Under the pieces are notes generated by a model. The model saw nothing but the letters and a program-made list of their open reading frames with translations, was not told where the DNA came from and made no database searches. Of a stretch of 64,000 bases of DNA, positions 1,398 through 1,541 are shown piece by piece. The position numbers and the translations under genes are program-made. Numbering within the stretch: the first letter of the stretch is position 1; every line of letters begins with the position of its first letter. The stretch spans positions 62,001-126,000 of the IMG/VR virus record IMGVR_UViG_3300046703_000335. One strand, 5' to 3'.

Positions 1398-1541
1398 AAA
1401 AAATTACGCAGAAGTTAGGGATGCTAATTTTTTGGCTTCTAATGATGGACTTGAACCATCGACGCATTTCTTATAAGGAAATTGCCCTACCAACTGGGCT
1501 AATTAGAAAATGTAAGCAACCAAAGTAATTGCGTAATTTTT
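1398..1541 (-). ncRNA. Y-RNA-like element A: conserved closing stem enclosing a complete tRNA
   Basis: Minus strand: AAAAATTACGCA-ATTAC-TTTGGTTGCT-TACATT-[tRNA]-AAAAATT-AGCATCCCTAA-CTTC-TGCGTAATTTTT; 12-bp terminal stem and motif shared with elements B and C. Confidence 0.75.
1433..1508 (-). tRNA. tRNA with anticodon UAU (Ile, reads AUA), 76 nt with encoded CCA; nested in element A
   Basis: Acceptor TTCTAAT/ATTAGAA, D-arm GCCC-AGTTGGTA-GGGC, anticodon arm ATTTC-CTTATAA-GAAAT (TAT at 1475-1473), T-arm GATGG-TTCAAGT-CCATC, discriminator G, then CCA. Confidence 0.85.

What the first reader, a model, noticed from the sequence alone, without database searches (positions are those of the whole stretch)
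1433..1508. Complete tRNA with rare UAU anticodon nested inside a Y-like scaffold
A 76-nt cloverleaf with CCA. Established: most bacteria read AUA with lysidine-modified tRNA-Ile(CAU), UAU anticodons are rare, and tRNA-Ile normally has A73; here it is G73 with U1-A72. ATA codons are visibly common in this phage. It is either a TilS-independent AUA decoder stored inside a Ro-bound precursor and released by RNase P/3' trimming, or a decoy not meant to be charged. Comparing A (full tRNA) with C (acceptor lost) looks like a snapshot of tRNA capture into Y RNAs.
Basis: partly seen in the sequence, partly recalled or inferred. Interest (0 to 1): 0.7.

Follow-up and report, generated by a model that had tools for sequence, protein, structure and literature searches.

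The report
tRNA nested in phage Y-RNA scaffold
A complete tRNA (anticodon UAU) sits inside one of three tandem structured RNAs that share a conserved stem scaffold and lie next to a hidden Ro60-like protein gene in a huge peat phage, so it looks like a new form of the Ro60/Y-RNA system in which the tRNA's anticodon changes between related phages.

Summary
Window 1433-1508 (- strand) is a canonical 76-nt tRNA: anticodon UAU, G73, U1-A72, encoded CCA. It is the only tRNA in the 210-kb record. It is not a free-standing gene. It forms the head of module A (1399-1541), one of three tandem RNAs (A, B, C; 1399-1898) that share a scaffold. That scaffold is a 12-13-bp terminal stem, a conserved internal loop, a short helix and a conserved GCUUACAUU/UAGCA helix.

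The scaffold recurs in arrays in more than 12 related huge-phage contigs, with strong covariation (27 of 41 pairs compensatory; 0 of 500 shuffles reach this). Two genes downstream lies a conserved 520-aa protein that Pfam's TROVE model misses. Its AlphaFold model matches Ro60 over its full length (Z 19.3; the 13 best Foldseek hits are all Ro60). Arrays and this gene co-occur down to 42% protein identity, and a 93%-identical relative lacks both.

So the "Y-like, Ro-bound" reading is largely supported, although the canonical Rsr-binding motif and the Rfam Y-RNA models do not match. The "tRNA-Ile" label rests on the anticodon alone. The same tRNA body carries UAU, UAA, CAA or UCA in close relatives. 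Release and charging remain untested. I rate it a new variant of a known kind.

The parts
1433..1508 (-). 76-nt canonical tRNA, anticodon UAU, G73, encoded CCA (the 'head' of module A)
   Evidence: ARAGORN; Rfam tRNA 62.8 bits; cloverleaf is the MFE fold
1399..1541 (-). Module A: the whole scaffolded RNA. Outer stem 1530-1541/1399-1410. 5' scaffold strand 1509-1529 (AUUAC-N8-CUUACAUU). 3' scaffold strand 1411-1432 (AAAAAU-UAGCAU-N5-ACUUC)
   Evidence: Fold z -3.3; 14-sequence alignment A3, 27 of 41 pairs compensatory, 97.7% of cells paired versus 76.9% shuffled
1599..1717 (-). Module B: same scaffold, non-tRNA cargo (U-run/A-run hairpin plus a GC-rich hairpin)
   Evidence: Fold z -4.3; orthologues in L017, L034, L036, L043, L046, L051; the changes in the X6 strain keep the hairpin paired
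1775..1898 (-). Module C: same scaffold carrying an acceptor-less tRNA-like core (D, anticodon UCU and T arms at 1807-1866). The 5' strand has GUGAAGG, close to the Y-RNA CGAA motif
   Evidence: Rfam tRNA 51.3 bits, model positions 7-64 only; alignment A6, 18 of 32 pairs compensatory
1552..1576 (-). Inter-module 25-nt direct repeat (small hairpin plus GGAUUGAAAC), copy 1
   Evidence: the repeat finder D2; only two copies in the genome; absent in the X6 strain
1734..1758 (-). Inter-module 25-nt direct repeat, copy 2
   Evidence: absent in the X20 variant; related copies in L041 and L077
1953..2002 (-). Conserved promoter-like leader upstream of the array (CGATCTATAT ... AGTATTTG)
   Evidence: Conserved by eye in L017, L034, L036, L040, L041, L043, L045, L062, L077; inference only
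1245..1395 (-). Conserved 3' RNA segment following the modules
   Evidence: Kept in relatives, including L002, which lacks the modules
1200..1244 (-). Intrinsic terminator closing the RNA operon
   Evidence: Terminator scan, 20-bp stem plus T-run
1..471 (-). First 157 codons of the 520-aa Ro60-like protein (HEAT ring plus vWA/MIDAS). The rest lies just outside the window, at genome 60912-62000
   Evidence: VWA_2 E 2e-4; profile hits only phage phiLo Ro60 in PDB sequences; AF2 pLDDT 81.9; Foldseek top 13 hits all Ro60, E 1.6e-11; VIA-align Z 19.3/18.5/16.8 over about 440 residues
530..796 (-). Conserved 88-aa protein between the array and the Ro60-like gene, function unknown
   Evidence: Synteny; no family hit
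846..1157 (-). Conserved 103-aa protein directly downstream of the RNA operon, function unknown
   Evidence: Alignment A2; synteny
2015..2395 (-). Conserved 126-aa protein (weak DUF6582 match) directly upstream of the RNA operon
   Evidence: 76 homologues

Best explanation
The 76-nt tRNA is the head of a phage Y-RNA-like molecule. The - strand of 1200-2002 is one stable-RNA operon: conserved leader, modules C, B and A, a conserved 3' RNA, and a terminator. Each module is closed by pairing of its own 5' and 3' ends and carries the same conserved basal scaffold. The scaffold most likely is the binding site for the divergent Ro60 orthologue encoded two genes downstream. This parallels how Y RNAs and YrlA bind Ro60/Rsr.

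The scaffold presents a variable head. In C the head is an acceptor-less tRNA mimic. In B it is a non-tRNA hairpin domain. In A it is a complete tRNA.

Module A keeps a 7-bp acceptor stem, U at position -1, an encoded NCCA and an A-rich single-stranded trailer. I therefore infer that host RNase P plus 3' trimming can release a 76-nt tRNA from the Ro-bound precursor. The precedent is Mycobacterium smegmatis YrlA, which is cut by RNase P and receives CCA in vivo. In this strain the released tRNA would read AUA, the phage's commonest Ile codon.

The anticodon is a swappable, selected element on a conserved body, not a fixed Ile identity.

Shown: the tRNA; the scaffold and its covariation; the array family; the Ro60 fold of the neighbouring protein; co-occurrence and co-loss; anticodon switching.

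Inferred: Ro binding; processing and release; charging; which amino acid is attached.
For: The tRNA is canonical. The scaffold is shared by three modules in the window and by 33 distinct modules in related contigs.

Covariation: in the outer helix, 11 of 13 pairs have double changes and 100% of cells are paired. For the whole structure 0 of 500 shuffles reach the observed values, and slid controls pair only about 42%. The C-type alignment has 18 of 32 compensatory pairs. In the conserved helix, CUUACA/UAGCA changes to CAUACA/UUGCA in three modules. Outer stems contain G-U pairs and no A-C mismatches, so the pairing is at RNA level on the - strand.

The neighbouring 520-aa protein has the Ro60 fold over its full length. 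Every module-bearing contig carries its homologue.

The link persists in distant huge phages. At 57% Ro identity (L112) there is a 4-module array with a full tRNA. At 42% identity (LR756511.1, 595 kb) there are 14 or more modules with the same C[U/A]UACA core, 5 of them tRNAs, directly upstream of the Ro-like gene.

A relative with 93% nucleotide identity in the flanks lacks both the modules and the Ro-like gene.

NCCA plus an A-run is kept in most A-slot orthologues. ATA makes up 45% of Ile codons. The anticodon is under selection: UAC and AUC are retained across diverged bodies, yet all three anticodon positions vary within two close groups (p = 5e-4 each).

Precedents: YrlA next to Ro60 in bacteria and phages, and RNase P cleavage with CCA addition of M. 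smegmatis YrlA (PMC4201824); Yrl1/Yrl2 upstream of phage phiLo Ro60 (PMC12135203).
Against: No binding, processing or charging data exist. The RNA runs gave no transcript evidence. The complex prediction was not folded.

Rfam finds no Y-RNA family match, and the GNCGAAN0-1G motif is absent from module A. Pfam TROVE does not hit the protein. No RtcB, CCA-adding enzyme or RNase III was found in the 210 kb held, but the record is only 45% complete.

Ile identity is doubtful. The discriminator is G73, not A73. The body is shared with UAA, CAA and UCA variants. The Leu-type anticodons sit on a body with a short variable loop. A34 anticodons (AUC, AUU, AAC) occur in orthologues. These points fit a non-decoding role equally well.
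Confidence: 0.5

Rival explanations
1. tRNA mimic or decoy only. Module A is never released or charged. All heads (A and C alike) are baits presented on a Ro60 particle to proteins that read anticodon loops, such as host anticodon nucleases, modification enzymes or synthetases. Anticodon switching would then reflect an arms race with host defences that target tRNA.
For: Acceptor-less C-type paralogues use the same kinds of loops, including the identical CUUAUAA loop in L051 and L077. C-type loops include G33 and 6-nt loops, which are incompatible with decoding. All three anticodon positions switch among close relatives. A34 and Leu-type anticodons sit on a class I body, and G73 stays the same whatever the anticodon. 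Phage tRNAs are known to vary their anticodon loops to evade host nucleases (PMC10264068). The Ro/Y-RNA/RtcB operon responds to tRNA damage (PMC7790460).
Against: A-slot RNAs keep a 7-bp acceptor stem, U33, A37 and an encoded NCCA at the exact 3' position across diverged phages. A pure bait would not need these. The anticodons lean towards the phage's most-used A/U-rich codons: GAU, AAU, AAA, AUA, UUA, GUA.
Confidence: 0.3
2. Ordinary phage tRNA gene in a multi-RNA transcript. The flanking stems would be RNase III-type processing stems, as around rRNAs, and the Ro60-like gene nearby would be coincidental.
For: The tRNA is canonical and has CCA. The stems of 12-17 bp with internal loops resemble RNase III sites. 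Codon-supply logic fits.
Against: The internal scaffold motifs are conserved in sequence, not just paired. They are shared by modules with non-tRNA and acceptor-less cargo. The link with the Ro-like gene holds at 57% and 42% protein identity, even with the array inverted. A close relative lacks both.
Confidence: 0.15
3. DNA-level element: the inverted repeats mark mobile cassettes or recombination hairpins that shuffle tRNA genes, with no RNA scaffold function.
For: Cargo differs between orthologous slots. The modules are present or absent between 93%-identical relatives. An HNH endonuclease gene is inserted at the locus in L045.
Against: Outer stems tolerate G-U pairs but show no A-C mismatches among about 170 cells. 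That pattern fits only RNA pairing on the sense strand. The internal loops are conserved strand-specifically.
Confidence: 0.04

Closest known systems
YrlA-type bacterial and phage Y RNAs with Ro60/Rsr (Chen et al. 2014, PMC4201824)
   Same: An ncRNA encoded beside a Ro60 orthologue. The 5' and 3' ends pair into a basal stem with a conserved protein-binding region. The distal domain mimics tRNA. M. smegmatis YrlA, which has a 7-bp acceptor stem, is cut by RNase P and receives CCA.
   Different: Here the tRNA part is in native order (D-anticodon-T) with an intact anticodon arm. YrlA is permuted (T, acceptor loop, D) and has no anticodon arm. Module A holds a complete tRNA with encoded CCA. The GNCGAAN0-1G motif is absent from module A; only a near match, GYGAAGG, occurs in the C type. 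Rfam gives no hit. There are 3 to 14 or more modules in tandem rather than one or two.
Thermus phage phiLo Ro60 with Yrl1/Yrl2 (PMC12135203; PDB 9KOP, 9L5Y)
   Same: A phage-encoded Ro60 with Y-like RNAs encoded upstream of its gene. This is the only PDB sequence hit of the protein profile, and the fold matches at Z 16.8.
   Different: About 14% sequence identity. phiLo Ro60 is recognised as TROVE; this protein is not. The phiLo Yrls were identified by a CGAA motif and are not reported to contain a full tRNA.
Deinococcus radiodurans Yrn1/Rsr
   Same: The tRNA-like elements are in the same order relative to the 5' end, with a potential anticodon-like arm (PMC4201824). The Rsr fold matches (2NVO, E 1.6e-11, Z 18.5).
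   Different: Yrn1 has a 6-nt 'anticodon' loop, no full D arm, no acceptor stem and no CCA. Its Ro-binding helix resembles that of metazoan Y RNAs, which this scaffold does not.
Phage tRNAs with altered anticodon loops that evade host tRNA nucleases (PMC10264068)
   Same: Phage-encoded tRNAs whose anticodon loops evolve faster than the rest of the molecule.
   Different: There the anticodon is kept and the neighbouring loop bases change. Here the anticodon triplet itself switches, and the tRNA is embedded in a Ro-associated scaffold.
TilS-independent tRNA-Ile(UAU) decoders (e.g. Mycoplasma mobile; from my own knowledge)
   Same: A UAU anticodon that could read AUA without lysidine.
   Different: Those are dedicated tRNA-Ile species with a co-adapted IleRS. 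This body has G73 and is shared with non-Ile anticodons in close relatives.

Membership tests
Y RNA / YrlA (Ro60-associated ncRNA) | Encoded adjacent to a Ro60/Rsr gene | tested here: met
   A 520-aa protein with the Ro60 fold lies two genes downstream. The synteny is kept in all module-bearing contigs and in two distant huge phages.
Y RNA / YrlA (Ro60-associated ncRNA) | 5' and 3' ends pair into a basal stem that contains a conserved bulged or internal-loop region | tested here: met
   The outer helix is 100% paired and 11 of 13 pairs are compensatory. The internal loop AUUAC/GACUU and the helix GCUUACA/UAGC are conserved.
Y RNA / YrlA (Ro60-associated ncRNA) | Rsr-binding sequence motif GNCGAAN0-1G on the 5' strand (PMC4201824) | tested here: not met
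   Absent from module A, whose 5' strand reads UUUGGUUG. C-type modules have the near match GYGAAGG (AGCGAAGG in L034 and L051).
Y RNA / YrlA (Ro60-associated ncRNA) | tRNA-like domain with D and T arms | tested here: met
   Rfam tRNA hits in modules A and C. The topology differs from YrlA: native order rather than permuted.
Y RNA / YrlA (Ro60-associated ncRNA) | Match to curated Y-RNA covariance models | tested here: not met
   No Y-RNA-type family appears among the 21 Rfam matches at E up to 10 over 1100-2100.
Y RNA / YrlA (Ro60-associated ncRNA) | Physical binding to Ro60 | not testable with these tools
   Complex prediction does not fold protein-RNA jobs.
Elongator tRNA-Ile(UAU) | Canonical cloverleaf with conserved tertiary nucleotides and a 3' CCA | tested here: met
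Elongator tRNA-Ile(UAU) | Ile identity set (A73 and others; E. coli rules, from my own knowledge) | tested here: not met
   G73, U4-A69, C12-G23 and U29-A41 read from the sequence. Only the anticodon-loop elements fit.
Elongator tRNA-Ile(UAU) | Anticodon conserved among orthologues | tested here: not met
   The same body carries UAU (window, X6 strain), UAA (L049), CAA (L077) and UCA (L048). More distant orthologues carry UAC, GCA, CUU and AUC.
Elongator tRNA-Ile(UAU) | Aminoacylation with Ile and use on the ribosome | not testable with these tools
   No expression or charging data are available.
Ro60 / TROVE protein (the 520-aa neighbour) | HEAT-repeat ring followed by a vWA domain with a MIDAS site | tested here: met
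   DxSxS motif at residues 341-345 within the VWA_2 match at 338-428. The AF2 model aligns with 1YVP, 2NVO and 9L5Y over 417-448 residues at Z 16.8-19.3. vWA-only hits cover just 333-505.
Ro60 / TROVE protein (the 520-aa neighbour) | Match to Pfam TROVE (PF05731) | tested here: not met
   No match at E <= 0.01 in the six-frame search of the record or in the hmmscan.
CRISPR repeat / solitary repeat unit (the inter-module repeats) | Identity to the repeat of a host CRISPR array, or a Cas6 partner | tested here: not met
   Exact scans of the viral and genome collections gave only one chance hit, inside a Bacteroides coding gene. Rfam CRISPR-DR9 scores only 14-16 bits. No Cas6 was found.

The most novel reading that the evidence does not exclude
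Huge phages carry a cryptic Ro60 family together with arrays of 'programmable' Y RNAs. A constant Ro-binding scaffold displays interchangeable tRNA or tRNA-like heads. Their anticodon loops are the specificity element and are switched episodically under selection. The switching would either retune which codon the phage supplies or retarget which host tRNA-directed defence or enzyme the Ro particle engages. Under this reading, many 'tRNA genes' of huge phages would really be cargo of Ro60 particles.
Probability: 0.25. Interest if true: 0.88.

Novelty: new variant of a known kind. Interest (0 to 1): 0.74.

Why it matters
Ro60/Y-RNA particles are conserved from bacteria to humans, yet what the tRNA-like domain of bacterial Y RNAs does is still open.

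This locus offers a natural series on one scaffold: a full tRNA, an acceptor-less mimic and a non-tRNA head. The series is repeated across many phages, with the anticodon as the fastest-changing selected feature. That makes two questions directly testable: whether Y RNAs can store and release working tRNAs, and whether they act as baits for tRNA-reading proteins.

It also exposes a widespread Ro60 family in huge phages that standard annotation misses: 480 or more homologues, on contigs up to about 595 kb.

Finally, it warns that labelling a phage tRNA by its anticodon ('tRNA-Ile') can mislead.

Tried and rejected
1. A six-frame Pfam TROVE search of the window's record and two relatives found nothing. 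Structure prediction later showed the Ro60-fold protein, so 'no Ro' was a false negative.

2. I asked whether the inter-module 25-nt repeats are CRISPR repeats or RNA anti-CRISPRs. Exact scans of viral and prokaryote collections gave only a chance hit inside a Bacteroides gene. No Cas6 was found. The question is unresolved and not part of the main claim.

3. RtcB, CCA-adding enzyme and RNase III were not found in the 210 kb held.

4. Rfam found no Y RNA, GOLLD, ROOL or other tRNA-mimic family at the locus.

5. Complex prediction (Ro-like protein plus module A RNA) was not folded and gave no verdict, so it is no evidence either way.

6. RNA-seq evidence: the metatranscriptome runs of the same study hold nothing of the locus. 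One run of uncertain kind holds only a relative's fragments.

7. Most pattern-scan hits were chance: 22 of 24 viral loci and 48 of 55 metagenome loci lacked the flanking stem.

8. Homologues of the upstream protein in L003-L005 and L038 have no array.

9. I rejected the DNA-hairpin or cassette reading on the G-U versus A-C asymmetry.

10. I tried reading the C-type 'GCUUACA/UAGC' helix as a degenerate acceptor stem. Only 3-4 of 7 pairs form and the mismatches are conserved, so it is not an acceptor stem.

Full report
**Observation**

The window is bases 62001-126000 of a 210-kb IMG/VR virus record from peat. CheckV estimates it as 45% complete. It has 35% G+C and nearly all genes are on the - strand.

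ARAGORN finds one tRNA in the window, and in the whole record, at 1433-1508 (-) with anticodon UAU. Rfam's tRNA model scores 62.8 bits over all 71 positions. Reading the sequence gives an acceptor stem UUCUAAU/AUUAGAA, discriminator G73, CCA encoded at 1435-1433, and then AAAAAU. The cloverleaf is the minimum-energy fold.

**What surrounds the tRNA**

On the - strand, three units follow one another:
- C: 1775-1898
- B: 1599-1717
- A: 1399-1541

Each unit is closed by a 12-13-bp stem formed by its own ends. Each has the same internal plan:
- outer stem
- AUUAY, eight variable bases, then CUUACAUU
- cargo
- UAG(C/U)A(U/C), five variable bases, then ACUU
- outer stem

The cargo of A is the complete tRNA plus its NCCA and an A-run. 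The cargo of C is a tRNA-like core that Rfam matches only from position 7 to 64, so it has D, anticodon (UCU) and T arms but no acceptor stem. The cargo of B is two hairpins with no tRNA features.

Two 25-nt direct repeats lie between the units. A strong terminator closes the region at 1200-1244.

**The scaffold is a conserved, covarying RNA structure**

Homologues of the 126-aa protein encoded just upstream (76 proteins) led to syntenic loci in many metagenome contigs. Pattern scans added more. Between the same two flanking genes these contigs carry one to four modules of the same design, 33 distinct modules in all.

The modules fall into recurring slot types:
- an acceptor-less tRNA-like (C type)
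- an optional tRNA with a short acceptor stem
- a non-tRNA B type
- a full tRNA with a 7-bp AU-rich acceptor stem and NCCA (A type)

I aligned 14 full-tRNA modules. RNAalifold recovers the outer stem, an inner helix, the conserved UGCU/AGCA helix and the cloverleaf. The covariation counts for that structure are:
- 27 of 41 pairs show compensatory changes.
- 97.7% of cells are paired, against 76.9% in shuffles and about 42% when partners are slid.
- None of 500 shuffles reaches any observed measure.
- In the outer stem, 11 of 13 pairs have double changes and every cell is paired.

Thirteen C-type modules give 18 of 32 compensatory pairs. Even the sequence-conserved helix covaries: CUUACA/UAGCA becomes CAUACA/UUGCA in three modules. 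G-U pairs occur but A-C mismatches do not, so the pairing acts in RNA on the - strand.

**A hidden Ro60**

The six-frame Pfam TROVE search was negative. However, the conserved 520-aa protein two genes downstream has a C-terminal vWA domain with a MIDAS DxSxS motif behind about 330 helical residues. Its first 157 codons are window 1-471 (-).

A profile of 24 homologues hits only one thing among PDB sequences, weakly (E 0.31): the Ro60 of Thermus phage phiLo. The AlphaFold model has pLDDT 81.9 and pTM 0.72, and it settles the question:
- The 13 best Foldseek matches are all Ro60/Rsr and all full length. They include D. radiodurans Rsr (E 1.6e-11), phiLo, human and Xenopus Ro60.
- vWA-only proteins follow six orders of magnitude behind.
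- An independent aligner gives Z 19.3, 18.5 and 16.8 over 417-448 residues for Ro60 entries.
- That aligner matches vWA-only proteins over residues 333-505 alone.

**The RNA array and the Ro-like gene travel together**

Every module-bearing contig carries the homologue.
- In a 389-kb phage contig whose protein is 57% identical, a four-module array with the same scaffold core and one full tRNA lies upstream in divergent orientation.
- In the 595-kb uncultured phage LR756511.1 (42% identical), at least 14 modules with the C(U/A)UACA core fill 3.5 kb directly upstream of the gene. Five of them are tRNAs.
- Conversely, a relative whose flanks are 93% identical in nucleotide sequence has lost both the modules and the Ro-like gene at this locus, while keeping the 3' RNA and the terminator.

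**Comparison with known Y RNAs**

YrlA RNAs are encoded beside Ro60 in more than 250 bacteria and phages. They have a basal stem with the motif GNCGAAN0-1G and a tRNA-like domain. The M. smegmatis YrlA, which has a 7-bp acceptor stem, is cut by RNase P and receives CCA in vivo (PMC4201824). Phage phiLo has two Y-like RNAs upstream of its Ro60 (PMC12135203). A few jumbo phages are already known to have TROVE proteins (PMC7824862).

The present RNAs share the architecture and the gene neighbourhood but fail two membership tests. No Rfam Y-RNA model matches. The Rsr motif is absent from module A; C-type modules carry only the near match GYGAAGG.

The topology also differs. Here the tRNA part is in native order with an intact anticodon arm, and in module A it is a whole tRNA. 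I therefore file it as a new variant of the Ro60/Y-RNA kind, not as YrlA.

**Is it a tRNA-Ile?**

Only by its anticodon. Orthologous A-slot tRNAs share the acceptor stem, the arms and nearly always G73, but the anticodon differs:

| Source | Anticodon |
|---|---|
| Window and the X6 strain | UAU |
| L049 (upstream protein 89% identical) | UAA |
| L077 | CAA |
| L048 | UCA |
| More distant orthologues | UAC, GCA, CUU, AUC and others |

Within each of two independent close groups, all three anticodon positions are among only seven variable sites of the 76 (p = 5e-4 each). Yet UAC and AUC are retained between bodies that differ at up to 20 other positions. The anticodon is therefore selected and switches episodically.

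Several features are odd for decoders:
- Leu anticodons sit on a body with a short variable loop.
- A34 anticodons occur.
- C-type loops include G33 and 6-nt loops, although they always keep U36-A37-A38.

On the other side, the A slot keeps every feature a working tRNA needs, including NCCA. Many of the anticodons also match the phage's most-used A/U-rich codons. ATA is 45% of Ile, AGA 48% of Arg, and GAU, AAU and AAA are the top three codons.

**Mechanism**

My best reading is that the operon makes several Ro60-bound Y-like RNAs. Module A additionally serves as a precursor from which RNase P and 3' trimming can release a tRNA that reads AUA in this strain. Confidence in the Ro/Y association is about 0.75. 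Confidence in the whole chain, including release, is about 0.5.

The main rival (0.3) is that no head is ever released, and that all of them are baits for proteins that read anticodon loops. That fits the known link between the Ro/RtcB operon and tRNA damage (PMC7790460), and the anticodon-loop arms race of phage tRNAs (PMC10264068).

An ordinary tRNA gene with RNase III processing stems (0.15) and a DNA-level cassette (0.04) fit the data poorly.

No transcript, binding or charging evidence could be obtained.

Noticed in passing
window 1552-1576 and 1734-1758 (- strand): Two 25-nt direct repeats (GUCGCUGAAAAGCG[C/U]GGAUUGAAAC: a 4-bp hairpin plus an ATTGAAAC-type tail) look like a Cas6-type CRISPR repeat. 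Related copies occur in L041, L077 and, partly, L045. Each copy is precisely missing in a natural variant: X6 lacks 1548-1597 and X20 lacks 1723-1769. No matching host array or Cas6 was found. They may instead be processing sites or internal promoters; a TTGAAA -35-like box was flagged.
   Followed up: partly
window 1245-1395 (- strand): A conserved RNA segment with its own hairpins follows the modules, ahead of the terminator. It is kept even in the relative that lost all modules (L002), so it may be a separate small RNA.
   Followed up: no
genome 51521-51921 (- strand), about 10.5 kb outside the window's start: ARAGORN calls a tmRNA with a 26-residue tag ending in ...SSIAA. I did not check it with Rfam.
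   Followed up: no
Ro60-like protein residues 110-139 (outside the window): The AF2 model shows a long lysine-rich beta-hairpin (GKKVKIRIKTGKKIKIDKK...) inserted among the HEAT repeats. It could be an added RNA-binding arm.
   Followed up: no
L002 4390-4513 and L045 3391-3494: The sequence that replaces the modules in the 93%-identical relative shares a GGATAGGGTAGCTCCCGAAAA motif with the stretch next to an HNH endonuclease gene inserted at the same locus in L045. This suggests homing-endonuclease traffic at the site.
   Followed up: no
L055 1340-2150: A metagenome contig in a different gene context carries about five tandem modules with the GCTTACA core and mostly non-tRNA cargo. One module has D and anticodon arms but an odd long insert in place of the T arm.
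   Followed up: no
L113 (LR756511.1 280762-292225), locus 800-4300: A 595-kb uncultured phage has 14 or more scaffolded modules in a row upstream of its Ro-like gene. One tRNA match spans 127 nt, so it carries an insert. This suggests that large tRNA arrays of huge phages can be Ro-associated.
   Followed up: partly
L036, L040, L043, L045 modules: Several orthologous tRNAs have A34 anticodons: AUC three times, AUU and AAC. These would read the phage's favourite NNU codons by Watson-Crick pairing. Such anticodons are almost unknown in bacteria.
   Followed up: no
window 7502-8413 (- strand): A 303-aa protein with a ParB N-terminal (ParB/GmrSD-like nuclease) domain.
   Followed up: no
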